A stretch of 64,000 nucleotides of DNA, taken from positions 62,001 to 126,000 of the IMG/VR virus record IMGVR_UViG_3300037010_003311, one strand, 5' to 3'. The notes beneath the pieces were generated by a model. That model ran no database searches. It was not told the DNA's origin and saw only the letters and a program-made list of their open reading frames with translations. Positions 726 to 60,198 of the stretch are shown piece after piece. Positions within the stretch are counted from its first letter, which is position 1, and the number at the start of each line of letters is the position of its first letter. A program made the position numbers and the translations under genes.

Positions 726-770
726 AAAGAACTTACCGGATAACCAGGTAAGTTTCCCGGTCGCTAAAAT
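726..770 (+). terminator. Hairpin plus degenerate TCCTGTCG element
   Basis: AACTTACC/GGTAAGTT stem followed by TCCCGGTCGCTAAAA; homologous to 1604-1650. Confidence 0.5.
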
Positions 771-827
771 GTTACAGATTGAAATTTGATACAATATACT
801 AGCGGTCGATCATTAAAAGGAATATAA

Positions 828-1361
828 ATGGTGGAAAAAAAATATAAACTTGGTGAGTCAGAAGAGTTTCCATCTGGAACTCTTTTTAGAGTTATAGCAT
901 TAAAAGATTTTAACGATGTAACTGCTGGTGAAATCGGTGGTTGGATCGAAAAAGAAGATAACCTAGCGCAAGATGGTGACGCTTGGGTCTATGGTGACGC
1001 TATGGTATATGGTGATGCTCGAGTTAGTGATGATGCTCAGGTATATGGTAATGCCCGAGTTAGTGGTGAGGCTCGAGTATATGATAAGGCTCACGTTAAG
1101 GATAATGCTGAAGTATATGGTAATGCTCAAGTATATGGTTATGCTATGGTATATGGTAATGCTGAAGCATATCGTTTTGCCAAAGTATATGATTATGCCG
1201 AAGTATATGATTATGCCGAAGTGTATGATAATGCTCAAGTGTATGATTATGCTGAAGTATATGATAATGCTGAAGTATATGGTATGGCTCAGGTATACGG
1301 TTGGGCCAAAGTATATAACGATACTCATGTATCTGGTTATGATGAAGTATATAGTGTATGA
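828..1361 (+). CDS. Hexapeptide-repeat beta-helix protein (YdcK-like), copy 2
   Basis: N-terminal KYKL..E....LFRVIALKDF.DV..GEIGGWIEKEDNL head then AxVY(G/D) repeats; RBS AAAAGGA. Confidence 0.9.
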   Translation: MVEKKYKLGESEEFPSGTLFRVIALKDFNDVTAGEIGGWIEKEDNLAQDGDAWVYGDAMVYGDARVSDDAQVYGNARVSGEARVYDKAHVKDNAEVYGNAQVYGYAMVYGNAEAYRFAKVYDYAEVYDYAEVYDNAQVYDYAEVYDNAEVYGMAQVYGWAKVYNDTHVSGYDEVYSV

Positions 1362-1630
1362 TGACAAAGTATATGCTATCCTATAAACCAAAGTTACCAA
1401 TACAAGAACTCAGCGAAGAAACTTTTAAAAGGGAATACCTAAGCGAGGATATACTTTACGCTAAGTCATATAATATGTGCGGTGAATGTATTTTCTTTGA
1501 ACCGGGTCGTGGGTGTACTACTTCAAAACTTGAAGCTAAGTACGGGAATAGTCGTACACCAGCCTGCGAAGAATTTAAAATAAAAGGAATGAGCAATGAC
1601 AACGAAAGAGCTTACCGGGATATCCGGTAA
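1358..1630 (+). CDS. Small Cys-rich hypothetical protein
   Basis: ATGA overlap with upstream gene; CGECIFF...C...C motif, similar spacing to CKCCGYF...C...C in 34844-35185. Confidence 0.65.
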   Translation: MMTKYMLSYKPKLPIQELSEETFKREYLSEDILYAKSYNMCGECIFFEPGRGCTTSKLEAKYGNSRTPACEEFKIKGMSNDNERAYRDIR

Positions 1631-1650
1631 GCTCTCCTGTCGCGAAAAAG
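1604..1650 (+). terminator. Hairpin plus TCCTGTCG element
   Basis: Perfect 12-bp AGAGCTTACCGG/CCGGTAAGCTCT stem containing the stop codon, then CTCCTGTCGCGAAAAAG. Confidence 0.6.
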
Positions 1651-1707
1651 AAGACATAATGAAATTGGATATACTATACTATCGTATGATCATTAAAAGG
1701 AATATAA

Positions 1708-2295
1708 ATGGTAGGAAAAAAATATAAACTTGGGGAGTCAGAAGAGTTCTTAGGAAGAACTATTTTTAGAATTATAGCACTAAGAACATTTAATGATGTA
1801 TCTATCGGAGACATTGGTGGATGGGTCGAAAGTGAAAATAACTTAGATCATAATGGTGGTGCCTGGATTTATGGTAATGCTATGGTATATGGTGATACTC
1901 GAGTTAGTTGTAATGCTATGGTATATGGTAATGCTATGGTATATGATAATGCTCAGGTATATGGTGATGCTCAAGTATACGGGGATGCCCAAGTATATGG
2001 TAATGCTCAAGTATATGGTGATTCTCATGTATATGATAAAGCTATTGTATATGATAATGCTGAAGTGTATGATAATGCTCAAGTATATGATTATGCGGAA
2101 GCATATGGTTTTGCGGAAGTATATGGTAATGCTCAAGTATATGGTTATGCTGAAGTATATGATAATGCTAAAGTATATGATAGGGCTGAAGTATACGGTT
2201 TTGTGGAAGTATATGATAGGGCTCAAGTATATGGTTATGCCGAAGTATATAGCGATACTCATGTATATGGTTATGAGGAAGTATATAGTGTATGA
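1708..2295 (+). CDS. Hexapeptide-repeat beta-helix protein (YdcK-like), copy 3
   Basis: Same head domain and repeats as copy 2; near-identical upstream GATCATTAAAAGGAATATAAATGG. Confidence 0.9.
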   Translation: MVGKKYKLGESEEFLGRTIFRIIALRTFNDVSIGDIGGWVESENNLDHNGGAWIYGNAMVYGDTRVSCNAMVYGNAMVYDNAQVYGDAQVYGDAQVYGNAQVYGDSHVYDKAIVYDNAEVYDNAQVYDYAEAYGFAEVYGNAQVYGYAEVYDNAKVYDRAEVYGFVEVYDRAQVYGYAEVYSDTHVYGYEEVYSV

Positions 2296-2445
2296 GTCAG
2301 AGATAGTATAACTAGTTTAGATTGGTCTGCTAGTTCTATCAATTCAATGAATTGGCCAGAGGCCGTAAATTATGCTAAAAGTTTAGTTGCCCCAGTGTAT
2401 TATAAAGGGCAAGGAATAATAAAATTAAAAAAGGATATCAAATGA
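2296..2445 (+). pseudogene. DUF1566 (Lcl C-terminal)-like remnant, in frame after the copy 3 TGA
   Basis: VRDSITSLDW...MNWPEAVNYAKSL resembles the D..TGL.W...MTW.EA..YC..L start of DUF1566; no in-frame start before the motif; ends in ATGA overlap with the next gene. Confidence 0.55.
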
Positions 2446-2741
2446 GTTTATACCAAGAATTACTACAAAATCCTCCAGCTATAAAAATAAAAGATAATGC
2501 TAAAGAAGTCGTTTTTACAACAATATCGTGTATGTGTGATAATATACATTATCTTAATTTTAAAAAGAATGAAGCCGGGGAATTTAAAGTATCTGGTCGC
2601 AAATTTGCTTTAAGCAATTGGCAAATGAAAGATGACTACCTAACTGATTTAGGTTGGGCAGCAGATGATGAGGACTGGGATGAAGTTATCAGAATTATTA
2701 ATTCTGGTACAGAATTAGTACAATCTGCGAAATGTAGATAA
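2442..2741 (+). CDS. Hypothetical protein
   Basis: RBS AAAGGA, 99 aa ORF, coupled to the next gene. Confidence 0.75.
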   Translation: MSLYQELLQNPPAIKIKDNAKEVVFTTISCMCDNIHYLNFKKNEAGEFKVSGRKFALSNWQMKDDYLTDLGWAADDEDWDEVIRIINSGTELVQSAKCR

Positions 2742-3960: not shown

Positions 3961-6900
3961 ATGATAATCCCAGAAGTAAAATCAAGTACAATAACAAACT
4001 CAGTTGCACTTAAAAGTGTCGAATTTAGTATTACTAATAATGAGGAAGAGATTAAAAAATTGATGGGGATCTTAACATACGATCTCTACAAAAATAAACC
4101 AGGTGCTGTAATCAGAGAGCTTAGTACTAACTGTATTGATGCTCATAAGCTTGTGGCTAATGAATTAAAGTCCGGGCATATTGGATCAAAAACACCATTT
4201 GCTATCATACTCCCAAGTGATTATAATAATAACTTTTTAACTATCCGCGATTTTGGACCAGGGTTAACAGAAGAAGAAATGTTTACTATTTATCCAACAT
4301 ATGGGAGCAGTACGAAAGAGAATACTAATGATTATACTGGTTGTTTAGGACTAGGTAGTAAATCGCCGCTAGCAATCAGTCCAGACTTCTTAGTTACAAG
4401 TTATAATAACAATAAGGTTGCCGTATATAAAACTCAGATGAACGATGGTAAAACAAACTTAGATCTTCGTTGGACGGATTCGGTAATTAATGCGGAAATT
4501 GTAGATGATGTTACAATTGTAGATGATGTTACAATTGAACCAGAAGAGAATAAGCTTATTTTTAAAAATGATTATGCTCAATACTTCTGGTATAAAAATC
4601 ATATCCAGATGAATATAACACATAATAATTTTTTAATGATTGCTATCAATCTTAAAAATTTTTATAATATTGGGAACACTTTATCATATATCTTTATTTT
4701 AAGAACTGCTGATACTATTAACCATTATAAATTGGTCTTTAATATTAATAAATTAAATGAAGATGATTTAGATCAGAATAAAACATTTAATTATTATATA
4801 ACCGACCAGGATGATAATAAAATATTTTCTGGTGCCGAATCTAATATTTTAGATTACGATGATCTATCAGTTGTTGAGCAAAAAAATTATCATAATAATT
4901 TTAGTTTCTTTGGTATTAATCTTTTAGATATTTTACCAGAATTATCGGATAATAATTTAACTGGTTATATCTTCGAAGAAATATTTAAACCAGACGAAAC
5001 CAAGTTCCGAATTTTAAACGACGAAGAAATAAATGCGTTGGATATTACCGAACGTAGGGAATACAAACATAAATTAAAAGAATACGAGCTAAAGGAAGAT
5101 GCTCGTATAAAGAATGCTTTATTATATAGTTCTAGTTTTAATTCTGGTCTTAAAATTGAAGTACCAATTAGTGAACAATATAAGTCACAATTACTGAATG
5201 AAATTGAAAGACAATTATTATTCTTTGAGACTAAACCATATATAATTGAGTATACTAATTTTGGACCAATGGTTCATGAGTTGGTGGCCTACCAAGAGGT
5301 ATTACAACAATATTTTATTGAGTTTGTTCCAAACTTTTACCTTTCTGAAAAAAAAATATTAGATGGTAATATTTGGTGGATGGATAAAAAATATTCTGAT
5401 TTTATAAGTGCATATTCTAAAGTTACAAATCGTGGAGAAAATCTTTTATTAGTACAAGGTAATGTGACTTACCCGATTGATCTCCAAGCTATGATAGATA
5501 CACTTAAATCGGCTAGTCGGGATCCAAGATTTGAGATTGAAAGCGAATACTTACCGATAGTAGAAGCTTTAAGAACTGGTTACTACAATAGTATAGATGT
5601 AACATCTTTCCGCAACTTTTTCTGTGGAGTAATGTTTTTTGATATTGGTGAGATAAATTTTCATCCATCTCGCGAAAGCTTAAATTATGATATAACTACT
5701 AGTTTAAAAATATTTGATAAAATTGTACAAGTAATAAAACTAGTAGGAACCAAAATGATGGATACATTAAATGCGTGCATAGATGATATACATTTGGCTG
5801 GGGTAAAATATAACATTGGTAATCAAACTAATCTGATGTTTGAAAATGATAAGTATTTTGGGCCAACGAGATTAAATCTTATTGGTAATATTTTTCCAAA
5901 AATTTTACTAAATATTACTCCGGAAAAAACGGTTCTTGAAAAATTAAAAGAATTATATAAACCAGGCGAAAAATTAGTACAACTTACTACTACGAAGCGA
6001 GACCCCGGTAGTGAAAATCCAGAAATTGGTAAAGTGACTTCTAATAGGGCCAGTAACTATAAGGTTGCGACAGGTTATAATTTTGAGAACGCTTTATTAA
6101 CCGCTCCATTATCCACAGTATTAGTATTTGTCGATTCTTGGAAGAGTCGAAAAAATTTTATGGAACACTATATCGACATTATAAATTATTATATTGGTAA
6201 AGCTAAAACCGAAGACCAGGAAGCAGTAGCGGACTATCACGAAAAGAATCCAGATACTCTATATGAAGACGCACCCAGAAAGCATTGTAAAGTAATAGGT
6301 TCATCTAGCATTCAATTGGTAGAATGTAAAGTGCAAGGGCTACCAACCCTAACATCTATTGATAATCCTAATTATGGTTTATTCCAACCTATTTTTATTA
6401 ACCGCGAGCACCTAAAAGATGAAAACATTAGTCCAGAAGATTTTATGAAAGCACTTGGTATGGCATCATATAATGATATATATCCTCGCGCATTTAATTT
6501 AAAAGATGAAATAGCTAATCTTATTAAAATTGGTAAAGCTTCTTTACCAGAAAAAACTAGATCTTCAACTGCTGGGATACAAAAGGCTATTGGTACTATT
6601 AAAATAGACACGATTGGAAAATCTTCGTTATCCTTCTCAGAGTCTAATCTTTATTATAAGAAAAAACTAAGGGATGAGCAATTGGTTGAGATATTTGATA
6701 AAATTTTGGCCGCAAATAGTAATCCAGATTTAACTTCTATCAATAAAACAATAATAATTCTACCTTTAAATAAACGTGGAGAACGTACCAAAATTAATCA
6801 CCAATTCTTTAATTTGTATAATCATGAGAATCATAGTAGCGAAATTTATAACTTAATGTTAGTAAGTAAGTTTGATTCTTTCGCTACTAGACCAGATGGC

Positions 6901-15064: not shown

Positions 15065-15460
15065 ATGATACCAGTTTCAAAATTACTTGGCCCTATTAAG
15101 GATGAAAAAACTATGGAAATTAGGGAAACCTATGATCCAGAATGTGCTCACTATATAGTTGTGAATAAAAAATCAAATCATGGTTATAATGTAAAATTTA
15201 TTACCGATAAACCAAACAATAGTATTACCCCAACCTGTAATGTTAAGGTTTCGTGTAATTGTGATAATTTTCAATTTATGTATGCGTATGTATTATATAA
15301 AAATGATGGTTTATATAATCCCCATCGTTTAGTACTGACACCACCAGTTGAGAAAAATCCAAATATGATTATTGGAGCGTGTAAGCATGTAAAATTAGCC
15401 CTCTATAGAAAAATGACTAATAATGTACAAAAACTTGCAACTACGGATGGGGATATCTAA
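15065..15460 (+). CDS. SWIM zinc-finger protein
   Basis: VSCNCDNF...ACKHV (CxC...CxH). Confidence 0.75.
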   Translation: MIPVSKLLGPIKDEKTMEIRETYDPECAHYIVVNKKSNHGYNVKFITDKPNNSITPTCNVKVSCNCDNFQFMYAYVLYKNDGLYNPHRLVLTPPVEKNPNMIIGACKHVKLALYRKMTNNVQKLATTDGDI

Positions 15461-16782
15461 TGGCAATAAAAATAGATTTTACTGAATTTACTTTGGATCT
15501 ACCAGAAGTCAAAGATGCTTCTATTTATAAAACTGGTACTACTAATCACCAGTTTTCGGAAACCGGATTATATTCCGAACAGATTTTTGGTCCATTAAAA
15601 AATTATAAGTGTAGTTGTGGAAACGTAGTATCTAAAATAAATGCTGGTATACGGTGTGAAATATGTAATGTACTTTGTGAATCAGATAAATTACGAAATA
15701 CCCAATTTGCTAGAATAGAATTACCAAAAGGTATTTTTATTATTCTACCTACACTTATAAAAAATTTACATGATATCTTTGGACAGAATCCAATTAAAAG
15801 TATTATGGATAAAGCGCAGTATCAACATAATTGTGACAGACCTTATTATTTTTTAAATAACTTTTCTAAATTAGTAAAGATTCCAGAAAAGGATAAAGAT
15901 AAAGATAACTATCTAAAAGATTATCCAGTTTATGATATATCTTCTTTACATAGATTATTTCAATATCTTAGAGATGAGACTGATGCTTTAGATTCTAGAA
16001 TTTCAAAAAAATATCTAGATTATGTTTTTGTAGATTATGTTTTAGTGCTACCAGTTAATAGTAGACCGATTGTAAAGATTACAAATGAAAAAAGTAATGT
16101 TCATCCAATTACAGAAAAGTATGCGGAAATATTAAAAAATAAGAGCAATAGTCTTGTTGATGACTTTCATGAAATCAATGAAGAGATGTTTGGTGCAACT
16201 GTTTATAAATATCAAAATAGTGTTAATCAGTTATACGATATAATTTTGCAGAAAAACTTTCAGCAGAAAGAAAGCGTGAGTCGTGATTACATGATGGGTA
16301 AAATTATTGAACATTCCGGCCGTTTTGTTATTGTGCCAAATCCAATTCTAAAACCATATCAAATAGGTTTACAATCTCACGCTATCAAAGAGATAAATGT
16401 CCCGGAAATTAAACGATTCATTTATCAAAAATATGCTCAAAACTCAAGTGATGAAAAGATTATGGATTATCTAATAAATATAGATTCTCATAATTCATTT
16501 AGTTCAGTATTTAATATATCTGATGATTTACTAAAAGAATTTTTGGCAGAACAAGCCAAGAATTTAATTTATGTTTGTGAACGCCCACCTGTGTTATGGA
16601 AGTATAACGTTACCGCCTTTTTTCTAGGTTTAGTAAATTGGTCTGAAAAAGATGTTACTAGAGTTATGGTACCATTTACTTCAGTTGTAAAGAAAATAAT
16701 ATCTAAATTCACTAAACCAGACGCGAAGAAAATGAATTATAGAAAATCAATTAAAAGTGTTTCTGTAAATTTTGGTAAGTAG
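15460..16782 (+). CDS. rpoC: Multisubunit RNA polymerase beta' N-terminal piece
   Basis: GLYSEQIFGP, CSCG/CEIC zinc site, VLPVNSRP, MGKIIEHSGRFVI, ERPPVLW. Confidence 0.92.
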   Translation: MAIKIDFTEFTLDLPEVKDASIYKTGTTNHQFSETGLYSEQIFGPLKNYKCSCGNVVSKINAGIRCEICNVLCESDKLRNTQFARIELPKGIFIILPTLIKNLHDIFGQNPIKSIMDKAQYQHNCDRPYYFLNNFSKLVKIPEKDKDKDNYLKDYPVYDISSLHRLFQYLRDETDALDSRISKKYLDYVFVDYVLVLPVNSRPIVKITNEKSNVHPITEKYAEILKNKSNSLVDDFHEINEEMFGATVYKYQNSVNQLYDIILQKNFQQKESVSRDYMMGKIIEHSGRFVIVPNPILKPYQIGLQSHAIKEINVPEIKRFIYQKYAQNSSDEKIMDYLINIDSHNSFSSVFNISDDLLKEFLAEQAKNLIYVCERPPVLWKYNVTAFFLGLVNWSEKDVTRVMVPFTSVVKKIISKFTKPDAKKMNYRKSIKSVSVNFGK

Positions 16783-16863
16783 ATTACAATATTGTATCTA
16801 AGTAGTTAAACGGCTCCAAGAGCTAAACCAAAAACCTATAAAGGCATTAAATGGAAATTTTAA
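16690..16863 (+). pseudogene. Decayed NUMOD1/IENR1-type homing-endonuclease tail at the beta' split
   Basis: The beta'N frame reads KKIISKF...RKSIKSVSVNFGK*ITILYLSS*TAPRAKPKTYKGIKWKF*, resembling NUMOD1 (SI.EA...G....KT.KG..WK) with two internal stops. Confidence 0.5.
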
Positions 16864-18740
16864 ACAATATGGTCATGCATTTAAATAGTTTAAATGCAAA
16901 ACGCTTTAACAGTGACTATGATGGTGATGGTCTTGGGTGTTACTCTTTACATAGTACCCAAGCTAAAAAAGAAGCAAGGCGATATATGACGCCTATATCA
17001 AATATCCAACATGAACACAATCTCGAAATGGTGGATACGCTAGAGCATGAAAGTATTCAAGCGGCATACATGCTTTCGCTTAAGGGATGGAAAAATTTCG
17101 ATTCAAATAAAATCGAATTAACTTTACAAAACATAAGCGAATTCCAAGCAGATATAAATACAGTAATTAAAACTCCAAATATAGCAGTAAGGCTTATAGA
17201 TGAAGATATAGTATTACCATATAATTCTGTTCTAATTAACGCATCATTCGATATAGAAGAGTTAATATATACTGATAGTAGATTATTGTATAAAAAGAAT
17301 TTACTAGAACTGATTAAGCTTTTATACGACTTTGTAGAGAATGCTAAATTTCATGATAAATTACATAACTTCAATAAAGTACTACTTGAATGTAGTACAG
17401 TTGTTAGTTATTGTAATACAAGTTTTGAACTGAATCACTTTGCGGTGAATCATAAAGCAATTGAGGATTTCAAAAAAACACTTATAAATGAACCATTTAC
17501 TGGTTTCCATCAAAACCAAATGCTATTTGATACACATGTTAAAAATCTTATTTGTCATGATGAAGATAATATTCTAACGAATGTATTCAATTCTGGAGCA
17601 AGGATCAAAAATGTACAGTTGTTAAAAGCTGCTAGTAATAATGGTATCCCAACTGATATTAATGGTAGAGCATTTAAGCATAATATTAAAAACTCATTAC
17701 TTGATGGATTAACCGAAGAAGAGTTCTTTATGACTGGGGATAGTGCAAGACTAGCCTTAGCTCAAAGGCAAGATTCTATTCCAAAGGGTGGTGAACTTCA
17801 ACGGAAGATATATTTTACAACTGGATTCTTGCAACTCAATAATATTGCAGATTGTGGATCAGAAAAATATTTTACAATAGTGGTTAGTGATAGACATCAT
17901 TTAGCTTCCTTATATGGAAGATGGTATATTACTGATGATAATCCAAAACTACGTTTCGTTCGTTTAGATGATACTAAATTAATTGGTACGGAAATTAAAG
18001 TTCGTTCCCCAATTTATTGTAAGTCTGGTGATTATGCTATTTGTGATAGATGCTTTGGTTCTAAAAAACCAGATTCAGATAACATTGGTGCAGCTATTGG
18101 ATCATATATTGCGGAAAGTATCATTCAGTCAATTCTTAGAACTCACCACTTTAGTGGAGCTTTCATTACTGAGATTAAAAAAGAATTCAATGAAATTATT
18201 GAATCGTTACAATTCGAATCACCTAACATTATAAAAGGTAGTCCAGAAAATATTGATCGGTATAAACAATATCTTTTAGATAATTACTATAAGGAAGAAG
18301 ATTTTACTATAACCAAAACTAGTAAAAACTGCTACGAAATTGATGTTATTAATTTACCATTAAATGATGACTCTGTTAAAAAACTACAGGTTATTACTTC
18401 ATATATTGATAAGAATCGAGATAGTGATAATTTGATTTCACCAGAAGAGATATATAAATTTCTTAAAAATGAAATCATTATGCCTAATGATATTTTGAGT
18501 ATATATGTTGAATTAATTATTGGTATTCTATTTTACGATGAAGATGGTATTATGATTAGATATTCTGATAAAGAGATTAACTTCCAGTTGGCTTTAAAGA
18601 ATGTTATTTCGCATATTGATCCAAGAATGTCTTTCTTCTATGGATTCAACGATGGTAAGATTAGTGATTGTTATGATGCCGAAACCGAGGGAACGGTCCT
18701 AAAACATATGTATCAGGATTTAACTGATATCTATTATTAA
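16851..18740 (+). CDS. rpoC: Multisubunit RNA polymerase beta' C-terminal piece (catalytic)
   Basis: RFNSDYDGD (NADFDGD equivalent), bridge helix GELQRKI, DCGS, RSPIYC...CDRCFG, trigger loop IAESIIQSILRTHH. Confidence 0.95.
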   Translation: MEILNNMVMHLNSLNAKRFNSDYDGDGLGCYSLHSTQAKKEARRYMTPISNIQHEHNLEMVDTLEHESIQAAYMLSLKGWKNFDSNKIELTLQNISEFQADINTVIKTPNIAVRLIDEDIVLPYNSVLINASFDIEELIYTDSRLLYKKNLLELIKLLYDFVENAKFHDKLHNFNKVLLECSTVVSYCNTSFELNHFAVNHKAIEDFKKTLINEPFTGFHQNQMLFDTHVKNLICHDEDNILTNVFNSGARIKNVQLLKAASNNGIPTDINGRAFKHNIKNSLLDGLTEEEFFMTGDSARLALAQRQDSIPKGGELQRKIYFTTGFLQLNNIADCGSEKYFTIVVSDRHHLASLYGRWYITDDNPKLRFVRLDDTKLIGTEIKVRSPIYCKSGDYAICDRCFGSKKPDSDNIGAAIGSYIAESIIQSILRTHHFSGAFITEIKKEFNEIIESLQFESPNIIKGSPENIDRYKQYLLDNYYKEEDFTITKTSKNCYEIDVINLPLNDDSVKKLQVITSYIDKNRDSDNLISPEEIYKFLKNEIIMPNDILSIYVELIIGILFYDEDGIMIRYSDKEINFQLALKNVISHIDPRMSFFYGFNDGKISDCYDAETEGTVLKHMYQDLTDIYY

Positions 18741-21930: not shown

Positions 21931-23907
21931 ATGAGTATTGTTAGTCCCCAAATTGAGGTATTTGAACCATTTTCCTCTAACACTGATGCTAGTAGAACAA
22001 ACATGAGTTCAAAGCAGTTACTACAGGTTATTGTTGCTGAAGGTACCGAGATACCATACATTCTAAATAAAAACTATAAAGTTATGACGACCGTTAATTC
22101 ACCATTTGTAAAAATTGCTGAAGAAGATGGAGTAGTAATCTACAACAATAATAATCTTATTGGATATGTATATAAAGAAACAAAACGAATTACCTTTGAC
22201 CATTTACCAGATACTAAGAAAATGGTAAACAATAGCCTAACGCTGAAATATATAACCAAAGAGCCTAGATTTAAAAAGGGTGACGTCCTTTGGGATTATA
22301 CTAATCAAGATCCTGAAACGAATATGCCAAGAACTGGATATAGAGCAAACATTATGTATTCTAGCTTCTTTGGTTTTAATGCGGATGATGCAATGGTTAT
22401 ATCTGAAAGTTTTGCTGAGAGATGCCGCATAGATTATTCGGAAAAAATATTTATGCCTATAACACCGGAAATTAAATACATTATGAATGAAGGTAGGAAT
22501 AAGTATTTAACTGGACCAGATGAAATTACACCAAATAGTTTTTATATTCAATACAATAAAATCGATACATCTAAACATTTTTTAACCGAATTAATAAATG
22601 TAAATAATTCTGTTTCAAAATCAGCTAGTAAAATGGTTGAAGCGATTGCTGGTGGAAAAATTTTATCTTTAAAAATTCATAAGCTTTCAGATTTATCTTT
22701 CAATGAATTAAAAGCTAGATATGTTTATACTCCAACGTTAATTGATGAGATTGAGGTATTGTATAATGATCAAGCTGGAATTCATAAACATATTCTGGAT
22801 TCATTGCGGTTGTATATGCAAGAAGATGACGCTGAAGCTATTCATTCAAAACTGATTAAAAACTATTATTCAGTAACTGAGTTCAATGATATATTTATGA
22901 CGGATTTAGCGGATAATTATAAGATTGATAAAGACTCGATTGATATAGTTATCGAACTTGAAATTCATAAAGATCTACCAACTTGTACGGGTGATAAATT
23001 TACCAATCTATTTGCTGGTAAAGGAGTTGTCTCATTAATCATTCCTGACGAATTAATGCCGAGAGATGAAGCTAATGATCCAGCTGATATCATCTTTAAT
23101 CCACTTGGATTATTTGGTCGTAATAACTGGGGAACAGTTTTTGAAATGGCTTTAGCTAAGATAATAGAAGATGTTGAAGAAAACATTAATAATCGAACTC
23201 AAACCCTTAGACGATTAAAGTTTATTAATAAGCATTTTATTCGTCTATACGATGAAGACTACTATCATAACGTAGAACAACTTATCGAAAACTTTGATGA
23301 GCGGTTTGATGAGTTTAAACATCAAGTACAAACCAAAGGGTTTTTTCTATATGTTGAAAATTTTCCAAAAATAGCATATAATGATTTCATTAATGATTTT
23401 GTAAATCCATATGAGGCAACATTTAATGTCAATATAACTAAGAAAGAGAAAACTATCTTTTCAAAAGAGTTGATGCAATTTATGCGAGATAAAGGATTTA
23501 AAACAACTTTGTTTAACTCAGCTCAGGATATTGAACAAGATGTTTATTTTGGTCGTAATTATTATATGAAACTTTTCCATACTGCCTGGTCAAAATATAA
23601 TGCCGTTGGTTTTAGTTCAAGCTACTCACGTATAACTGGACAACCAGCACGGGGTCGTAAAAACAAAGGTGGTTTACATATCAGTTGGCAAACTTTTGCG
23701 GCATTACTTGGTTATAAAACTAAGAATGCAGTTCTAAAAGAATTCTACTCTATTAAAGCGGATGTTGCTATAGCTGATAAAAAGATTTTCATTAATAGTT
23801 TTATAAACAGTGGTGAATACATACTAAAAAACAAGTATTTCTCACAAACTAAGCAAACTTTGACTAATGCTTTGAAAATGATAGGGATGATTTTTAAGAG
23901 TGATTGA
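21931..23907 (+). CDS. rpoB: Multisubunit RNA polymerase beta C-terminal piece
   Basis: PFSSNTDASRTNMSSKQ, GFNADDAMVISES, GDKFTNLFAGKGVVS, DIIFNPLG, YMKLFH, YSRITGQP.RGR..KGG. Confidence 0.93.
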   Translation: MSIVSPQIEVFEPFSSNTDASRTNMSSKQLLQVIVAEGTEIPYILNKNYKVMTTVNSPFVKIAEEDGVVIYNNNNLIGYVYKETKRITFDHLPDTKKMVNNSLTLKYITKEPRFKKGDVLWDYTNQDPETNMPRTGYRANIMYSSFFGFNADDAMVISESFAERCRIDYSEKIFMPITPEIKYIMNEGRNKYLTGPDEITPNSFYIQYNKIDTSKHFLTELINVNNSVSKSASKMVEAIAGGKILSLKIHKLSDLSFNELKARYVYTPTLIDEIEVLYNDQAGIHKHILDSLRLYMQEDDAEAIHSKLIKNYYSVTEFNDIFMTDLADNYKIDKDSIDIVIELEIHKDLPTCTGDKFTNLFAGKGVVSLIIPDELMPRDEANDPADIIFNPLGLFGRNNWGTVFEMALAKIIEDVEENINNRTQTLRRLKFINKHFIRLYDEDYYHNVEQLIENFDERFDEFKHQVQTKGFFLYVENFPKIAYNDFINDFVNPYEATFNVNITKKEKTIFSKELMQFMRDKGFKTTLFNSAQDIEQDVYFGRNYYMKLFHTAWSKYNAVGFSSSYSRITGQPARGRKNKGGLHISWQTFAALLGYKTKNAVLKEFYSIKADVAIADKKIFINSFINSGEYILKNKYFSQTKQTLTNALKMIGMIFKSD

Positions 23908-36414: not shown

Positions 36415-36449
36415 TTATTTGGAATTTTTTTTGTTTTTTTGGGCAGGAA

Positions 36450-36480
36450 AATAAATACGAGGCTTAGCCTCGTATTTATT
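36450..36480. terminator. 14-bp perfect inverted repeat at end of - strand block
   Basis: AATAAATACGAGGC-TTA-GCCTCGTATTTATT, 6 nt past the stop of 36487-38733. Confidence 0.8.
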
Positions 36481-47986: not shown

Positions 47987-48033
47987 TATTGTTTCCTCTT
48001 CCTGTAAATTAATACCGGTTACTTATAACCTAT

Positions 48034-48075
48034 TTGTTTTTCGACGACAGGAAAACGGTCGAAAACCGACCGTTA
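48034..48075 (-). terminator. Hairpin plus TCCTGTCG element
   Basis: - strand: TAA overlapping AACGGTCG-GTTTT-CGACCGTT, then TTCCTGTCGTCGAAAAAC. Confidence 0.6.
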
Positions 48076-49503: not shown

Positions 49504-49530
49504 ATTTACCCAATTAACATATCAAGGTGA

Positions 49531-50241: not shown

Positions 50242-50252
50242 AAATATCCTTT

Positions 50253-51332: not shown

Positions 51333-51343
51333 TTATTCCCTTT

Positions 51344-53914: not shown

Positions 53915-53924
53915 TCATAATCTT

Positions 53925-54371: not shown

Positions 54372-54577
54372 TATGCTTCCTTTTTAGTGCGTTTTGGATA
54401 TTCTGTCTCGCGAGCTTTTAGCGCCGCTTTCCAAGGTGCTGCAAGTTTACGGAATTTTGAAAGAGCAACTCTTGCTCTTTTACCAGCCGCTTTATTATTG
54501 GAATTTATTAATTCCAGTTCTTTTGTAAACTCATTAAGAGTATTTTTTATTTCTTCTGTAATAGCGCTATATGCCAT
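54371..54577 (-). CDS. Small basic histone H1/Hc1-like nucleoid protein
   Basis: NKAAGKRARVALSKFRKL matches the NKAAG.RARK.S.. motif. Confidence 0.65.
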   Translation of the reverse strand: MAYSAITEEIKNTLNEFTKELELINSNNKAAGKRARVALSKFRKLAAPWKAALKARETEYPKRTKKEA

Positions 54578-54611
54578 CGGTATTTCCTTTTAATTTTTTT
54601 ACTATTTTTAT

Positions 54612-54622
54612 ATTTCTATAAT
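54612..54622 (-). promoter_or_regulatory. ATTATAGAAAT motif variant
   Basis: One mismatch to consensus, 35 nt upstream of 54577. Confidence 0.5.
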
Positions 54623-54646
54623 ACTAATTTAATAGTTTTTAAACGA

Positions 54647-55480: not shown

Positions 55481-56475
55481 GATTTTACCTTAATCCAATA
55501 TTCAAAACATTCCCCAATACCGGCAATGAGATGTAAGTGTTTAAATTTTTTGTATTCCAAGTTTTGATAATAATTAATCAATATGTTTTTAATTGGTAAA
55601 TATAGATCATCGTTAATCAATTTTGTAAAGATATAGTCGTAATTGATAGTAGCATCATCCTGCATAATTTTTACAAGCCAATCATAGTATTGGGCTATAG
55701 CAGTTTTGGTTGGTTCTAATAAAAGTCTAGTACTTTCTAAATCTAAGTTAGTTGGGTAAGTTAAAAGATATTTAATTATACCAATCATAGAATCTTCCAC
55801 ACCAGAACTAGATAAGCCCACACCAACACTCTGCGGACGAAATGTATTAGACATACTTGCCAGTTGCAGATTATTAAGAATATCCCGAACACCTTTTGTT
55901 TTAAAAGCTAAAGCAAATTGTCGCAATTCCTCTAATTCATATTGAACGGCCTCTTGTTTTAAAATATATTCCAATCTTGGAATAAGACCTTCAATATTAA
56001 TTTCGGTAAAATTTAATTTGATATTAAATCTTTGTAGTAGAGCTGGATCAAGCTTTTGAATATTATTCGTCGTAGCTATGAATGCGACATTTGGTTGATA
56101 TTTTTCAAGAAATCCATCTTTAAGTACTGATAAGGCTTTCGCACTTAGATTATCGATCTCTTCACAAACGATAATTCTTTGCTTACTAGCTGTAGGAGCT
56201 CTTACAATCCAAGACGCTAGTTTATCAACATCATCAACTGAACGACCAAGAACAAAAACATCTTCGGCATGCTTAATAAAACTATTAATCAATACTTTAT
56301 TAATAGTAGTTTTTCCAACACCCCCTGGCCCATAAGATATAATATTACCTTGGATATAACCCTGCTCTACAAATTTCTTAATTGTGAATGCTTTTTCTTC
56401 ATCTGGAAATACAATCTCTTCTATAAATTTAGGCCTATACCGCTCGAACCAAGCTGCTTGCATAACATTGTGCAT
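55477..56475 (-). CDS. Clamp loader AAA+ subunit (T4 gp44/RFC-like)
   Basis: WFERYRPK..EE, GPGGVGKTT, CEEIDNL. Confidence 0.9.
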   Translation of the reverse strand: MHNVMQAAWFERYRPKFIEEIVFPDEEKAFTIKKFVEQGYIQGNIISYGPGGVGKTTINKVLINSFIKHAEDVFVLGRSVDDVDKLASWIVRAPTASKQRIIVCEEIDNLSAKALSVLKDGFLEKYQPNVAFIATTNNIQKLDPALLQRFNIKLNFTEINIEGLIPRLEYILKQEAVQYELEELRQFALAFKTKGVRDILNNLQLASMSNTFRPQSVGVGLSSSGVEDSMIGIIKYLLTYPTNLDLESTRLLLEPTKTAIAQYYDWLVKIMQDDATINYDYIFTKLINDDLYLPIKNILINYYQNLEYKKFKHLHLIAGIGECFEYWIKVKS

Positions 56476-56511
56476 TCTTTATCCTTTTTAATATTTTTAC
56501 CTCTCTATAAT

Positions 56512-56522
56512 ATTTCTATATT
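56512..56522 (-). promoter_or_regulatory. AATATAGAAAT motif inside a 12-bp inverted repeat
   Basis: Exact 11-mer 37 nt upstream of clamp loader; TCTCTATAATAT/ATATTATAGAGA at 56502-56529. Confidence 0.6.
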
Positions 56523-56550
56523 ATAGAGAATCGTTTTTCTAGTGTAAATT

Positions 56551-57597
56551 TTATATTCCTGGAAGAGTTGGATATTTACTGAAGTCTACACTTTCATTGG
56601 TATGGTACTCATTTTTAAGTAGCTTTTGTAAAGTATCTAAATCAATAGTTGCTCCACAAGCGTTACGATGGCCACCTCCACCAAATTTTTTAGCATAAAC
56701 CGAAGCATCACATAATGTATCTAAACTACGGAATGAAAGTACTACCTTTAAATCATCTGTTATAAAATACATCAACGCTGGTTTATTTGTAAGTTTACAG
56801 AGTTCATTCCCTACTTCTGAAATATTTTCGGTTAGATTCAAGCATACAAATTCTTCTGAATCAATAGTTATAGTTCTATATTTTTTAACTTTAGATGCAA
56901 CTGCTTGGTCTTTTACTCTTAATAGAGTTGCACCAATTTTAATGGCCTCATCCAGATCAAAGTTATCTACTAGATCTAAGAATGATTCTAAATTATTTGG
57001 AACAACTGAATATCTTAAATATTCAGAAACTTCTTTTGAATGAGCCAATGACCAGTTCCAAAGATCCCTATCCTGGATATAATCAGAAATAATATCCATA
57101 TTGCGCAGTCGTTTAACTTCATGTAATTTATTGGAAGTTGCAAAATAATCATAAGTAATTTTGGCACCCGAACGGTTCATATCAAATACTAATTCTAAAT
57201 TTTCAATCCCTGAATTTTCTAACTCTTTTAAATTGGCTTCCGCTGTTTTATGATGATCAAGAATGGTTACTGAGTTAAACTTAGTTGTGAGATCTTTTAT
57301 AATTTCGGGGGAAGCACTAAAATCTAAAAAGAGTAAATCAAAACTTTTGCTCATGTCATTTGCTAATACTTCATAGATATCTTCACCATACTGTATAGGT
57401 AAACATTTATATGATATTTCCATATCAATGAAATAGCTTTCTGCTATAAATGCCGCAGCTAATCCATCCATACAATTTTTATGATATAAGACTGTAACTT
57501 GTGGTGGGCATGGTAATGACTGCTCCAAACTATGAACATACCTCACAATATCACTGATTCTATTTACTGATAATTGTCTACCTTCATATGTACTCAT
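56551..57597 (-). CDS. DHH/DHHA1 phosphoesterase
   Basis: YHKNCMDG, FLDFS, LDHH, DRDLW, GGGHRNACG. Confidence 0.92.
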   Translation of the reverse strand: MSTYEGRQLSVNRISDIVRYVHSLEQSLPCPPQVTVLYHKNCMDGLAAAFIAESYFIDMEISYKCLPIQYGEDIYEVLANDMSKSFDLLFLDFSASPEIIKDLTTKFNSVTILDHHKTAEANLKELENSGIENLELVFDMNRSGAKITYDYFATSNKLHEVKRLRNMDIISDYIQDRDLWNWSLAHSKEVSEYLRYSVVPNNLESFLDLVDNFDLDEAIKIGATLLRVKDQAVASKVKKYRTITIDSEEFVCLNLTENISEVGNELCKLTNKPALMYFITDDLKVVLSFRSLDTLCDASVYAKKFGGGGHRNACGATIDLDTLQKLLKNEYHTNESVDFSKYPTLPGI

Positions 57598-58391
57598 TCA
57601 ACATCCTTTGATTTTTTAACACACTCAATTACTGCATCAACTTGACAAGTTATATATTCATGCGAGTCTTCGGTGTATGGTATGGTCATATTAATTAAAT
57701 AATCGAAACCAAAATATTCTAAAGCAAATTCTGATATATGATAACCATCTTCTTTCTCTTTATTAATAGCTGAGTTCAAAATTTTTACACAATAAACACT
57801 ATGAATACTTTCATCAACTAAACCACTGTACTCTTCCGGAAAGCGAAAATCGTTTACCAATATAAGTTTTTTAGTGCTTCTATTAACCGCGGTAATTACA
57901 AGTTGAGTCCATACTTCTTTAGTAAATACCAGTTTCCATATTTCACCAATTTGTCTAGTCAACTGTTTAATAGACATATGTAATTGTTCTGGAATCTCAT
58001 GCTCCAGTCTATAACCAGTTCCAAGGATATGGTTTAGAATAGCAAGTAGCCCCATTTTATTATATTCGAACCCTTTTTGACTAAGTCTTATAGCGGTATC
58101 GTTTATACAATCATTGATACGGTGCAGAATACCGGCACTATTAAAAGTATAAAGATCATTTAATTCTGTATCGGGGATATCCGTGATATCCATATTCATA
58201 AGTTGGGAAGCATAATTTTTTAGAAAAAATGCAAACTGTAGAGTTTCTAAATCATTTTTATCTTGTTCGAAGATTTTAGTTAAAAATAATCTTTCCTTTT
58301 TCTCACCACTTAATAAAATAATTTTTTTATATCGATCTTTAACTAGTGGTACTGGTGATACTGGTAGGGGGTCATTTAAATCATTATGCAT
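57594..58391 (-). CDS. Deoxynucleoside-monophosphate kinase-like protein, degenerate P-loop
   Basis: KIILLSGE.., FAFFLK, RQIGE..., LVNDFRFPEE, SEFAL; Walker A GKS/T/D absent. Confidence 0.65.
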   Translation of the reverse strand: MHNDLNDPLPVSPVPLVKDRYKKIILLSGEKKERLFLTKIFEQDKNDLETLQFAFFLKNYASQLMNMDITDIPDTELNDLYTFNSAGILHRINDCINDTAIRLSQKGFEYNKMGLLAILNHILGTGYRLEHEIPEQLHMSIKQLTRQIGEIWKLVFTKEVWTQLVITAVNRSTKKLILVNDFRFPEEYSGLVDESIHSVYCVKILNSAINKEKEDGYHISEFALEYFGFDYLINMTIPYTEDSHEYITCQVDAVIECVKKSKDVE

Positions 58392-58424
58392 CGTTTATCC
58401 TTTGTAAATTTAATTACCCTATAT

Positions 58425-58435
58425 ATTTCTATATT
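58425..58435 (-). promoter_or_regulatory. AATATAGAAAT motif
   Basis: Exact 11-mer 34 nt upstream of 58391. Confidence 0.6.
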
Positions 58436-58476
58436 ATATTAAATAGTAGGTTAACTATAATCACCATTTTAGAATG

Positions 58477-58525
58477 AATTCCTTTTTCTGCGACAGGAAA
58501 CCGATGGGTGGGATTATCTCCCACC
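58477..58525. repeat. 49-bp direct repeat, copy 1
   Basis: AATTCCTTTTTCTGCGACAGGAAACCGATGGGTGGGATTATCTCCCACC; 48/49 identical to 59931-59979. Confidence 0.95.
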
Positions 58526-59928
58526 TATTCCAATTGAAATATATAATTCCCGGAATCCCAAATTATATTATATTGGCTCGGATTGCTATTATTTTGAAAT
58601 CCAGGTATTAATTTATAAGGATTTTTATTTTTCCAATAAAAAGAGTTGGGATAGCTTGTACCAATTTCTTGGAAACCAAGTCGTCGGTATAAGTTGCCAT
58701 TCGACCAGCGTCTATTTACATAGGTTTTAATGCTTCCCGTGTGATCAGCCCGAAATGCTTTAAGCAATCTGCTTGCTGCACCATGAACATTATAACCAAG
58801 CTTATTGCAAAAACGCATTAGCTCCCAATCTGCGCTTTTGTCAATTCCTTCTTTGCTGGAAGCAAAATTCATAATGCTAATGAGATCATCATTATAATAT
58901 AGACCATAAGCAATTGAACTTGAGCAGTAACCTTGTAAGTGATTAGCTTCTAGAAACGGTTTTATATCATATTTAGGTACCGGCTTAATAGTATGATCCT
59001 CGGCTTCTAGTTGTATGCTTCTACCAAGAGTGTTCTGGATTATCGATTTCCAAATATTTTGCTTGGTTTTATTTACCCATTCGTTTTCGAAGATATGAAA
59101 AAGTTGGATACCTTTAGTCTGGCATAATTTAGTTTTATGTAAATGTCTATTTTTGCAATAATTAAAATCATTCTGTTGTTTACAGGTATGTTTATTTTGT
59201 CCACAATAACTATGCCAATATATACCATTATATTCGATTGCTAAATTATAGTCAGGTATATAGATATCTAATTCTAATGGTTTTATAATAGATCTGGAAC
59301 CAAGTATTATCTTAGAATCAATTAAACTAGAAATATAATTATTTATCTCATCTTCTGCCAAACTTTGGTTATAATATTGTGAGACCCCAATATCTAATTT
59401 TTTTAATTGTTTATGTGCGGTACTCTGATTACATTTAAAATATTCGGTGCATTTAATTAAATGAAATCGGTCATTAATAATAAAATTCGATATCCAAAAA
59501 TTTTTATTGTTCCAATTTTTTTGAATGGTTATATCATTATTAAATTTTCTCAACTGTTTTTCATTTTTAATTTTTTTACTATTTGATGGATTAGAAGCTC
59601 CATATTTTATTAGACAAGTATCTTTAACTTTATCTTTAGTATTAGCTAGTTGTGAAATATATTCTACTCCATAATTTTTAGAACAGGTTTCTTTTCTTTT
59701 TTTAATCGATTCGATTTTTAAATCTTCTTTTATAATTTCTTTGCATTCAATAGAGCAATATTTTGTAAATCCATACCCAATCTTCCAAGATATAAAATGA
59801 TTACAGTTTGGGTTAGAGCATTTAGCTTGTTCAAAGCTTTTGCCACTTTTTAAAAATCTGGATATAAAAGTCCTATCCACTTTTTTATTAATATCTAGTT
59901 CTGGATAAAAATTTAAAAAATCTTGCAT
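58525..59928 (-). mobile_element. Hef-like homing endonuclease gene with C-terminal GNAT-like domain
   Basis: ELDIYIPDYNLAIEYNGIYWHS; FLEANHLQG; ELMRFC...GAASRLLK; flanked by 49-bp direct repeats. Confidence 0.85.
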
Positions 59929-59930
59929 CT

Positions 59931-59979
59931 AATTCCTTTTTCTGCGACAGGAAACCGATGAGTGGGATTATCTCCCACC
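59931..59979. repeat. 49-bp direct repeat, copy 2
   Basis: Contains the last codons and stop of 59968-60198, a hairpin, TCCTGTCG and the RBS of the endonuclease gene. Confidence 0.95.
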
Positions 59980-60198
59980 CATCGCTGAACCTAACGCTTT
60001 TGATTTTTCTTCTTTTATTGTGACTACTAATTTTTCGAACTCACGTTGTGCGAATATTGGTAGCGACATATATTCAGTAAACCCCATGTTAAAGTTTGCA
60101 TAAGCTTGCAACTCCTGGAAGTTTTTTATTGCTGACATCCAATGATTTTCGGATAAATTATAAGGCGTAAAAAGATGAGGCTTTACGAAAAAACTCAA
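59968..60198 (-). CDS. Baseplate hub assembly protein (T4 gp51-like)
   Basis: Small protein with FTEYMSLPIF..REF motif directly after the gp26-like gene. Confidence 0.6.
   Translation of the reverse strand: MSFFVKPHLFTPYNLSENHWMSAIKNFQELQAYANFNMGFTEYMSLPIFAQREFEKLVVTIKEEKSKALGSAMGGR

What the first reader, a model, noticed from the sequence alone, without database searches (positions are those of the whole stretch)
726..59985. Recurrent gene-end element: GC-rich hairpin followed by TCCTGTCG(N1-3)GAAAAA
Seen at 726-770(+, degenerate), 1604-1650(+), 48034-48075(-), 58477-58525(-) and 59931-59985(-). Each lies at or just after a gene end, in the direction of transcription. The stems are three unrelated sequences, but the downstream box is conserved and there is no U-tract. 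The two + copies show a compensatory A-U to G-C change. Inference: a sequence-specific terminator, pause or RNA-processing signal for the phage RNA polymerase, analogous to T7 class II terminators. I know of no such signal described for phiKZ/AR9-type enzymes.
Basis: partly seen in the sequence, partly recalled or inferred. Interest (0 to 1): 0.68.

Follow-up and report, generated by a model that had tools for sequence, protein, structure and literature searches.

The report
Hairpin terminators with a conserved box
An uncultured giant phage ends many genes with RNA hairpins of unrelated sequence, each followed by the same short box (TTTCCTGTCG); this is most likely its own type of transcription terminator, built on the same plan as terminators already mapped in phiKZ-type phages.

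Summary
The window is part of a 226,657-bp metagenomic jumbo-phage contig. It encodes AR9/phiKZ-like split RNA polymerase subunits.

- **Counts:** exact TCCTGTCG occurs 4 times in the window (0.48 expected) and 16 times in the genome (1.4 expected).
- **Position:** all 16 are intergenic, co-oriented with the genes, and directly preceded by a hairpin. With near-variants there are about 23 sites and 17 unrelated stem families.
- **Relatives:** phages whose capsid protein is 49-60% identical carry hairpin + TTCTTGT(C/G). Four of them have it at the orthologous position after the capsid gene.
- **Refined anatomy:** variable hairpin, 2-4 T, then CCTGTCG.
- **Not without precedent:** phiKZ and 201phi2-1 have a published conserved terminator motif (hairpin + TTATGYYGT). 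Six mapped 201phi2-1 3' ends fall 8 nt after the stem, inside that box.

Best reading: these are intrinsic-type terminators in which a fixed pyrimidine-rich box replaces the U-tract. This is a new variant of a known kind. No RNA data exist for this phage, so the function is inferred.

The parts
729..755 (+). Hairpin of copy 1 (CTTACC stem family; imperfect)
   Evidence: RNA fold -13 kcal/mol; sequence
753..763 (+). Degenerate box TTTCCCGGTCG of copy 1
   Evidence: Read directly; listed as a variant
1607..1635 (+). Hairpin of copy 2 (12-13 bp; paralogue of copy 1 with an A-T to G-C compensatory change). The stop codon of ORF 1358-1630 lies inside it.
   Evidence: Fold -22.5 kcal/mol, z -4.7; ORF list
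1635..1642 (+). Box TCCTGTCG of copy 2. Predicted RNA 3' end at C1641, before G1642 (inferred by analogy with 201phi2-1).
   Evidence: Exact match; analogy
36450..36480 (-). Hairpin (14 bp) after the last gene of the minus-strand arm, at the point where the two gene arms converge.
36441..36449 (-). Variant box TTCCTGCCC following that hairpin. No co-oriented gene lies downstream.
   Evidence: gene arms
48054..48074 (-). Hairpin of copy 3 (8 bp, ACGGTCG stem). It overlaps the stop codon of gene 48073-49503.
48045..48053 (-). Box TTCCTGTCG of copy 3. Predicted 3' end at C48046.
48026..48038 (-). AACAAATAGGTTA, an AR9-type late-promoter-like motif. Not part of the terminator.
   Evidence: AR9 consensus AACA-N6-TA/G in PMC5312081. 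This copy fits only with a 7-nt spacer.
58507..58525 (-). Hairpin of copy 4 (7 bp). It is a 5'-truncated duplicate of copy 5 and starts at the stop codon of the homing-endonuclease gene.
58491..58498 (-). Box TCCTGTCG of copy 4. Predicted 3' end at C58492.
59956..59984 (-). Hairpin of copy 5 (12 bp). The stop codon of ORF 59968-60198 lies in its loop.
59945..59952 (-). Box TCCTGTCG of copy 5. Predicted 3' end at C59946.
58525..59928 (-). HNH homing-endonuclease gene bracketed by copies 5 and 4 (49-nt direct repeat, 1 mismatch)
   Evidence: phrog_3339 E 2.6e-93; repeat read
15460..16782 (+). RNA polymerase beta'-like N-terminal piece; part of the presumed enzyme that reads the signal
   Evidence: PF04997 E 2.3e-6, below the curated cut-off
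16851..18740 (+). RNA polymerase beta'-like piece
   Evidence: PF00623 E 6.3e-5, below cut-off; tblastn hits in AR9, phiKZ and phiR1-37
21931..23907 (+). RNA polymerase beta-like C-terminal subunit
   Evidence: PF00562 E 2.7e-25, above cut-off; best named match is AR9 gp089, the non-virion RNAP beta C-terminal subunit

Best explanation
These are the phage's transcription terminators, of the intrinsic (hairpin-driven) kind. The nascent RNA folds into a stable stem-loop of arbitrary sequence. The usual long U-tract is replaced by 2-4 U followed by a fixed CCUGUC. By analogy with mapped 201phi2-1 terminators, this stretch forms the last 8-9 nt of RNA-DNA hybrid, and release occurs at the C before the conserved G (UGUC|G). 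The polymerase being stopped is most likely the phage's own AR9/phiKZ-type multisubunit enzyme.

**Shown**
- The motif, its statistics, its position and orientation.
- The covariation in the stems.
- Conservation in relatives.
- The architectural match to mapped phiKZ-type terminators.

**Inferred**
- That RNA 3' ends form here.
- The exact release point.
- Which polymerase reads the signal.
For: 1. **Position and orientation.** 16 of 16 exact boxes are intergenic and in the sense orientation, in a genome that is 6.3% intergenic. The box starts 4-70 nt after the upstream stop codon at most sites.
2. **Every box follows a hairpin.** All 23 sites fold.
3. **Stems are unrelated.** Seventeen stem families have 5' arms only 26% identical on average, which is the random level. 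They still form perfect 7-16 bp helices, with 4-6 pair types at each stem position. Structure, not stem sequence, is selected.
4. **The box was found without assuming it.** In a k-mer test of the 16 nt after hairpins, CCTGTC (15 observed, 0.38 expected) and CTGTCG (13 observed, 0.32 expected) come top.
5. **Relatives keep it.** Contigs with a capsid protein 49-60% identical carry hairpin + TTCTTGT(C/G). In 4 of 7 it follows the capsid gene as it does here, with unrelated stems. TTC.TGT is the only invariant block in the alignment.
6. **Relative contig G002.** It has about 15 such sites, intergenic and co-oriented. Two of them face each other where the gene arms converge and no downstream gene exists. 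The own genome has the same arrangement at window 36441-36480.
7. **Separate promoter-like motifs lie downstream at variable spacing.** These are TATAGAAATAT and AACAAAT.
8. **Known parallel.** The phiKZ and 201phi2-1 terminator motif is hairpin + TTTATGYYGT. Six published 201phi2-1 termination sites all map to the 8th nt after the stem, TTTATGY[Y]|G. Without gaps, stem-TTCCTGTC|G aligns to stem-TTTATGYY|G with T1, T2, T5, G6, Y7, Y8 and G9 shared.
9. **Spacing fits.** The distance from stem to the predicted release point is 6-12 nt, mostly 8-9.
Against: - No RNA data exist. The only runs that hold this phage are DNA metagenomes.
- A CCUGUC hybrid is stronger than a U-tract, so canonical intrinsic release is not obviously favoured.
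- At three sites the next gene's Shine-Dalgarno and ATG begin 5-6 nt after the box, with no room for a promoter. Those terminators must be leaky, or the element does something else there.
- The closest named polymerase relatives, AR9 and phiR1-37, show plain T-rich tails and no box. The likeness to phiKZ may therefore be convergent or chance.
- The G after UGUC is not conserved in relative G002, which has CTTGT[CG][YG].
- No polymerase genes were detected in G002, a contig rated 65% complete. The link between box and phage polymerase is therefore untested.
Confidence: 0.7

Rival explanations
1. RNA processing or stability element. A phage or host endoribonuclease cuts in the single-stranded UUCCUGUCG just 3' of the hairpin. 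The hairpin then protects the upstream mRNA from 3' exonucleases, and the downstream cistron is released.
For: - A conserved single-stranded sequence next to a variable hairpin is what a sequence-specific RNase site looks like.
- Three sites sit 5-6 nt before the next Shine-Dalgarno/ATG with no room for a promoter. This fits cleavage within a polycistronic RNA.
- 3'-end mapping in phiKZ-type phages cannot by itself tell processing from termination.
Against: - 201phi2-1 terminators stop transcription in a terminator trap in uninfected cells.
- The stem-to-box spacing of 8-9 nt and the proximal T-run are what a terminator needs; a nuclease site has no such requirement.
- Copies at convergent arm ends have nothing downstream to release.
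Confidence: 0.12
2. Promoter, or combined terminator-promoter. The box (with or without the hairpin) directs initiation for the next gene, as hairpin promoters do for the N4 virion polymerase. The hairpin ends the previous transcript.
For: - Every site also lies upstream of a gene.
- Three sites have no other room for a promoter.
- In phiKZ the terminator box contains TATG, which one search's paper names as the phiKZ late-promoter core. Overlap of the two signals is therefore conceivable.
Against: - The box is locked to the hairpin (0-4 T between them), but lies 15-427 nt from the next start codon.
- Distinct promoter-like motifs, AACAAAT...TA and TATAGAAATAT, lie between box and gene at many sites.
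- Box copies occur where no co-oriented gene follows: window 36441-36480 and both arm ends in G002.
- No box occurs without a hairpin.
Confidence: 0.08
3. DNA-level site. The box is a target or recombination site for the phage's HNH homing endonucleases, or for another DNA transaction such as nicking, replication or packaging.
For: - Homing-endonuclease genes are bracketed by duplicated hairpin+box modules at three places.
- The strand of the box also follows GC skew, because all genes do.
Against: - Only 3 of about 17 independent sites have an endonuclease gene.
- Relatives have the box at orthologous gene ends without one.
- Placement right after stop codons and covarying stems point to a folded single strand made by transcription.
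- Endonucleases targeting a conserved terminator would explain the association equally well.
Confidence: 0.05
4. No special signal. These are ordinary hairpin terminators and the box recurs only through recent duplication of one repeat.
For: Some copies are clearly duplicates: 58491 and 59945; genome 135088 and 136760; 224555 and 225034; and the three CTTACCGG copies.
Against: - After collapsing duplicates, 17 stem families remain, and their arms are at random identity.
- The box is conserved, with one substitution, in contigs whose capsid protein is only 49-60% identical.
- 16 exact matches were observed against 1.4 expected.
Confidence: 0.03

Closest known systems
Conserved terminator motif of phiKZ and 201phi2-1 (Putzeys et al. 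2024, PMC10914365; 201phi2-1 transcriptome paper, PMC11512511)
   Same: - A jumbo phage with its own split multisubunit RNA polymerase.
- A gene-end hairpin followed by a short T-run and then a conserved non-U box.
- The box core T-G-Y-Y-G sits at the same distance from the stem.
- In 201phi2-1, mapped 3' ends fall inside the box, 8 nt after the stem.
   Different: - In phiKZ the stem sequence itself is conserved (CCCTCCC/GGGAGGG); here the stems are unrelated.
- The box is TTATGYYGT there and TTTCCTGTCG here.
- The phages share only 4 detectable genes by tblastn.
- AR9 and phiR1-37, which are nearer by polymerase, lack any box.
- No RNA mapping exists for this phage.
Canonical bacterial intrinsic (Rho-independent) terminators
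   Same: - A stable stem-loop right after a gene, co-oriented with it.
- T residues directly after the stem.
- A simple terminator scan picks up two of the three copies in window 46-62 kb.
   Different: The U-tract is cut to 2-4 U and continued by an invariant CCUGUCG. Ordinary terminators show no such fixed sequence.
AR9/PBS1 gene-end hairpins
   Same: - The closest named polymerase relative: beta subunit 24% identical.
- The same late-promoter type, AACA-N6-TA.
- Long hairpins at gene ends.
   Different: AR9 hairpins are followed by variable T-rich tails, with no enriched box. The only enriched post-hairpin words in AR9 come from a repeated structured element that looks like group I intron cores (the intron reading is my own).
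T7 class II (sequence-specific) termination signal, ATCTGTT (recalled from the literature, not retrieved here)
   Same: It is sequence-specific, contains CTGT, and acts with a phage-encoded polymerase.
   Different: It needs no hairpin and is read by a single-subunit polymerase. No such polymerase was found here (the control did not ring, so absence is not shown).

Membership tests
Intrinsic (hairpin-dependent) transcription terminator | Stable RNA stem-loop immediately downstream of a gene, in the direction of transcription | tested here: met
   23 of 23 sites fold, -10 to -28 kcal/mol. All exact copies are intergenic and sense.
Intrinsic (hairpin-dependent) transcription terminator | U-tract of about 7-9 nt directly after the stem | tested here: inconclusive
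   Only 2-4 T, then CCTGTCG. The tail is U-rich (5 of 8) but not a U-tract. The simple scan accepts some copies.
Intrinsic (hairpin-dependent) transcription terminator | RNA 3' ends form 7-9 nt after the stem, without a factor | not testable with these tools
   No RNA run holds this phage.
phiKZ-type conserved terminator motif | Hairpin followed by TTAT and KYYGT | tested here: inconclusive
   T1, T2, T5, G6, Y7, Y8 and G9 are shared in an ungapped register, but TTAT is replaced by TTCC.
phiKZ-type conserved terminator motif | Conserved G/C-rich stem sequence (CCYCCCC...GGGRRGG) | tested here: not met
   Stems are unrelated to each other and to phiKZ.
phiKZ-type conserved terminator motif | Phage encodes phiKZ/AR9-like split multisubunit RNA polymerase | tested here: met
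   PF00562 at window 21931-23907; best named hit is AR9 gp089; weak beta' pieces. Other domains were not detected.
T7 class II terminator | ATCTGTT box read by a T7-like single-subunit polymerase, independent of a hairpin | tested here: not met
   The box is CCTGTCG and always comes with a hairpin. No PF00940 match, although that search's control did not ring.
Known RNA families (Rfam 15) | Match at gathering score | tested here: not met
   0 matches in the window.
   17 intergenic sense AACAAAT, of which 13 fit the consensus. At 7 of 23 sites the motif starts 5-6 nt after the box. The window copy at 48038-48026 fits only with a 7-nt spacer.

The most novel reading that the evidence does not exclude
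The box is a true sequence-specific termination code for AR9/phiKZ-type multisubunit phage RNA polymerases. These enzymes, or a subunit or factor travelling with them, would need a defined terminal hybrid and downstream sequence (pyrimidines, then T-G-Y, 5-7 nt after a hairpin) instead of a U-tract. That code would be shared in core between Pseudomonas phiKZ-like phages and this very distant uncultured clade, and would drift with the lineage (TTATGYYG, TTCCTGTCG, TTCTTGTS). Because the stems here are unrelated, this clade separates the contribution of the box from that of the hairpin, which phiKZ cannot do.
Probability: 0.3. Interest if true: 0.7.

Novelty: new variant of a known kind. Interest (0 to 1): 0.5.

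Why it matters
Nothing I retrieved addresses how the non-canonical multisubunit polymerases of jumbo phages terminate. The papers I read describe the phiKZ motif as an intrinsic terminator. In phiKZ the stem and the tail are conserved together, so their roles cannot be told apart.

Here 17 unrelated stems share one tail, and the tail is kept with a single substitution in relatives. This suggests that the tail sequence itself is under selection. It gives a clean set of natural variants for testing whether these polymerases read a sequence-specific stop signal.

It also provides terminator and promoter landmarks for annotating an uncultured phage clade: TTTCYTGTCG, AACAAAT...TA and TATAGAAATAT. 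It also shows homing endonuclease genes inserting at terminators.

Tried and rejected
1. **A second hairpin between the T-run and the downstream A-run.** Matched pairs are no more complementary than mismatched ones (permutation p 0.99 for the own genome, 0.45 for relatives). Rejected.
2. **GAAAAA as part of the element.** Rejected.
3. **Pattern scans of IMG/VR for the box**. The one large contig checked (L002/G001) has a single match.
4. **Finding relatives through the polymerase beta subunit**. None found. The capsid and terminase routes worked.
5. **The exact box in AR9, phiR1-37, Vibrio D69, Acinetobacter MD-2021a and 201phi2-1.** Counts equal the reversed-pattern control.
6. **G003, the 210-kb contig with a terminase 26% identical.** No post-hairpin box.
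7. **RNA evidence.** No RNA run holds the phage. One wastewater run is labelled as a guessed RNA run but holds only 5% of the sampled words.
8. **Supplementary tables with termination sites for phiKZ and 201phi2-1.** Not held. I used six positions given in the 201phi2-1 main text instead.
9. **Elemental-pause reading (Y-1 G+1).** It fits this genome and phiKZ-type phages, but the G is not kept in relative G002. I keep it only as a hypothesis.
10. **Further RNA polymerase domains, PF04998 and PF04565.** Not detected.


Full report
**1. What the window is**

The window is bases 62001-126000 of a single 226,657-bp IMG/VR virus contig. The contig is 31.9% G+C and rated 81% complete. A crude codon-usage gene call gives 252 genes in two arms: plus strand from 1 to 98.3 kb, minus strand from 98.5 to 226.6 kb. 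No near relative is in the phage collection.

The window encodes a beta-like RNA polymerase subunit at 21931-23907. It matches PF00562 at E 2.7e-25. Its best named match is AR9 gp089, the non-virion polymerase beta C-terminal subunit, at 24% identity. Two weak beta'-like pieces lie at 15460-16782 and 16851-18740. Only about 20 genes match AR9 or phiR1-37, and 4 match phiKZ. This is therefore a very distant AR9/phiKZ-type jumbo phage. It is known only from microbial-mat, sediment and hydrothermal-vent metagenomes.

**2. The observation**

All five reported copies are present.

- Exact TCCTGTCG occurs 4 times in the window against 0.48 expected; none of 100 shuffles reached 4.
- It occurs 16 times in the genome against 1.4 expected from a first-order model.
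- All 16 are intergenic and on the coding strand, though only 6.3% of the genome is intergenic.
- At most sites the box begins 4-70 nt after the upstream stop codon.
- Every copy is directly preceded by a hairpin.

Allowing one change in the box adds more sites with the same anatomy. One was missed inside the window: hairpin 36450-36480 (-) followed by TTCCTGCCC, after the last gene of the minus arm. In all there are about 23 sites.

Several are recent duplicates. After collapsing them, 17 stem families remain. Their 5' arms are 26% identical on average, which is the random level. They still form perfect 7-16 bp helices, with 4-6 different pair types at each stem position.

A test that does not assume the motif counted words in the 16 nt after every hairpin in the genome. 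It puts CCTGTC (15 observed, 0.38 expected) and CTGTCG (13 observed, 0.32 expected) far ahead of all others. No Rfam family matches.

**3. Refined anatomy**

The element is a variable hairpin, then 0-4 T (mostly 2-3), then CCTGTCG. So 'no U-tract' is only partly right: the tail is U-rich but not a U-tract.

- At 7 of 23 sites the A-run is the start of an AACAAA(T/A) motif beginning 5-6 nt after the box.
- At 3 sites it is the Shine-Dalgarno region of the next gene.
- Relatives have a different sequence at those positions.

AACAAAT occurs 17 times in intergenic DNA, always in the sense orientation, all in the minus arm and 31-105 nt before start codons. Thirteen fit AACA-N6-T(A/G). That is the published AR9 late-promoter consensus (PMC5312081).

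A second promoter-like word, TATAGAAATAT, lies 30-50 nt before many start codons and downstream of several boxes. Because these motifs sit at variable distances after the box, the box is not the promoter.

I also tested whether the T-run pairs with the A-run to form a second hairpin. It does not.

**4. Relatives**

A capsid-protein search found one IMG/VR contig (G002: 181.6 kb, 52% identity) and seven metagenome loci at 49-60% identity.

- In four of the loci the capsid gene is followed by a hairpin of unrelated sequence plus TTCTTGTC or CTTGTG, as in this genome. Three others have a plain hairpin or a T-tract.
- In an alignment of seven such regions the only invariant block is TTC.TGT.
- Two relatives read TTTCTTGTCG, one substitution from this phage's box.
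- G002 has about 15 such sites. CTTGTC occurs 10 times after hairpins against 0.47 expected. The sites are intergenic and co-oriented. Two of them face each other where its gene arms converge, so nothing lies downstream to be expressed.

This is the strongest argument that the element ends transcripts rather than starts them. One caveat: G002 shares 60 genes with this phage, but no polymerase genes were detected in it, and it is only 65% complete.

**5. Comparison with known systems**

The statement that no such signal is described for these enzymes is out of date.

- ONT-cappable-seq of phiKZ gave 133 termination regions. Sixty-one share the motif BCCYCCCCHWWDGGGRRGGBYTTATKYYGT (PMC10914365).
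- 201phi2-1 has a very similar motif at 59 sites. Eight of its terminators worked in a terminator trap in uninfected Pseudomonas (PMC11512511).

I fetched both genomes.

- The motif-free test returns TTATGT, TTATGC and TATGTC after their hairpins. The aligned consensus is TTATG-Y-Y-G-T.
- Six 201phi2-1 termination sites given in the paper's text all fall on the 8th nucleotide after the stem, stem-TTTATGY[Y]|GT.
- Aligned without gaps, stem-TTCCTGTC|G matches stem-TTTATGYY|G at T1, T2, T5, G6, Y7, Y8 and G9.
- In this phage the distance from stem to that C is 6-12 nt, mostly 8-9.

By contrast, AR9, Listeria phage LPJP1 and phiR1-37 show variable T-rich tails. Vibrio phage D69 and contig G003 show nothing. 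The exact box is not enriched in any of the five named genomes searched.

The likeness to phiKZ is therefore a likeness of plan plus a short shared core. Common descent of the signal is not shown.

**6. Mechanism**

The best-supported reading (confidence about 0.7) is an intrinsic-type terminator. The hairpin does the mechanical work. UU(U)CCUGUC is the terminal hybrid, and release occurs before the G. The predicted 3' ends are window 1641, 48046, 58492 and 59946. These positions are inferred, not observed.

Points against:

- The hybrid is stronger than a U-tract.
- Three sites lie 5-6 nt before the next Shine-Dalgarno region, so they must leak or serve another role.
- The G is not kept in G002.

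Why the tail is fixed is unexplained. It may be a pause or translocation signal tuned to the phage polymerase, or a site for a factor.

The rivals are an RNase processing site (about 0.12), a promoter or dual element (about 0.08), a DNA-level site linked to the homing endonucleases (about 0.05), and mere duplication (about 0.03). The reasons are given in the rivals section.

**7. Side finding that bears on counting**

The HNH homing-endonuclease gene at window 58525-59928 (phrog_3339, E 2.6e-93) is bracketed by copies 59945 and 58491. These form a 49-nt direct repeat with one mismatch. The repeat runs from inside the 5' arm of the hairpin to the Shine-Dalgarno region, and the downstream copy has a truncated stem.

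The same arrangement holds for the paralogue at genome 135121-136686. Two HNH genes also sit between boxes just after the capsid gene. Endonuclease cassettes have therefore inserted at terminators more than once.

**8. Verdict**

The element is a new variant of a known kind, the conserved terminator motifs of jumbo phages that have their own polymerase. Its useful peculiarity is that stem and box are uncoupled. Interest is moderate (0.5). It would rise to about 0.7 if the box proves to be a sequence-specific stop code for these polymerases.

Noticed in passing
window 48026-48038 (-); genome-wide 17 sites in the minus arm (110-225 kb): The AACAAAT(N3)T[A/G] motif is intergenic, always in the sense orientation, and 31-105 nt before start codons. 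It fits the AR9 late-promoter consensus AACA-N6-TA/G, and so is likely the late promoter of this phage. It is also seen in relatives G002 and L234.
   Followed up: partly
window about 8125 (+), 13065 (+), 54612 (-), 56512 (-), 58425 (-), 61181 (-); bidirectional pairs at window 28184/28225 and genome 270-1400: A second promoter-like motif is TATAGAAATAT, with a longer form GTTAACATAGAAATAATATTATTGAATA in divergent pairs. The ATAGAAAT core is also present in relatives' intergenic regions. Its temporal class is unknown.
   Followed up: partly
window 58525-59928 (-) with repeats at 58477-58525 and 59931-59985; genome 135121-136686 and 146294-148790: HNH homing-endonuclease genes (phrog_3339/559) are bracketed by duplicated terminator modules. 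The copy downstream of the gene has a truncated 5' stem arm. At least seven HNH paralogues are in the genome.
   Followed up: partly
window 828-1361, 1708-2295, and genome 61700-62629: Tandem paralogous genes encode short repeats (GDA.VYG-like). Each is followed by a small ORF and a copy of the same CTTACCGG-stem terminator. The region is locally G-rich and has high GC skew.
   Followed up: no
window 28835-30271 (+): A 478-aa protein has a QueC domain in its C-terminal half (E 3e-29). This hints at 7-deazaguanine DNA modification.
   Followed up: no
window 3961-8022 (+) and genome 60161-61615 (+): There is an unusually long rIIA-like protein (1353 aa; only the first ~170 residues match rIIA) and an rIIB-like protein. 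The rIIB gene is followed by a hairpin+box terminator.
   Followed up: no
window 36300-36480: This is the convergence point of the two gene arms. The minus arm ends with hairpin + TTCCTGCCC. The plus arm ends with a hairpin without a box. An ATAGAAATAA promoter-like word points antisense into the end of the plus arm.
   Followed up: partly
window 46000-62000: Sigma-70-like promoter matches are fewer than in shuffled sequence (65 against 93.5 +/- 8.5). This is consistent with little reliance on host-type promoters.
   Followed up: no
L126 11411-11854 (genome about 166.4-166.9 kb, outside the window): There are three tRNA genes (Ala-TGC, Val-TAC, Gln-TTG) on the minus strand. A long imperfect hairpin + TTTTCCTGTCG follows them.
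   Followed up: partly
AR9 genome (L181-L193), e.g. 63979, 95624, 118423, 151159: A conserved repeated hairpin element (CTCTATGGTAACATAGAG with fixed flanks) occurs on both strands. It is probably from group I intron cores. It is unrelated to terminators but dominates AR9's post-hairpin word statistics.
   Followed up: no
201phi2-1 genome positions 183876, 132419, 84756, 229201, 179552, 230027: All six published termination sites fall on the same nucleotide of the conserved box: the second Y of TTTATGYY|GT, 8 nt after the stem. In these six, G also sits at -10, so G-10 / Y-1 / G+1 resembles the bacterial elemental-pause consensus. That consensus is recalled from memory, not retrieved here.
   Followed up: partly
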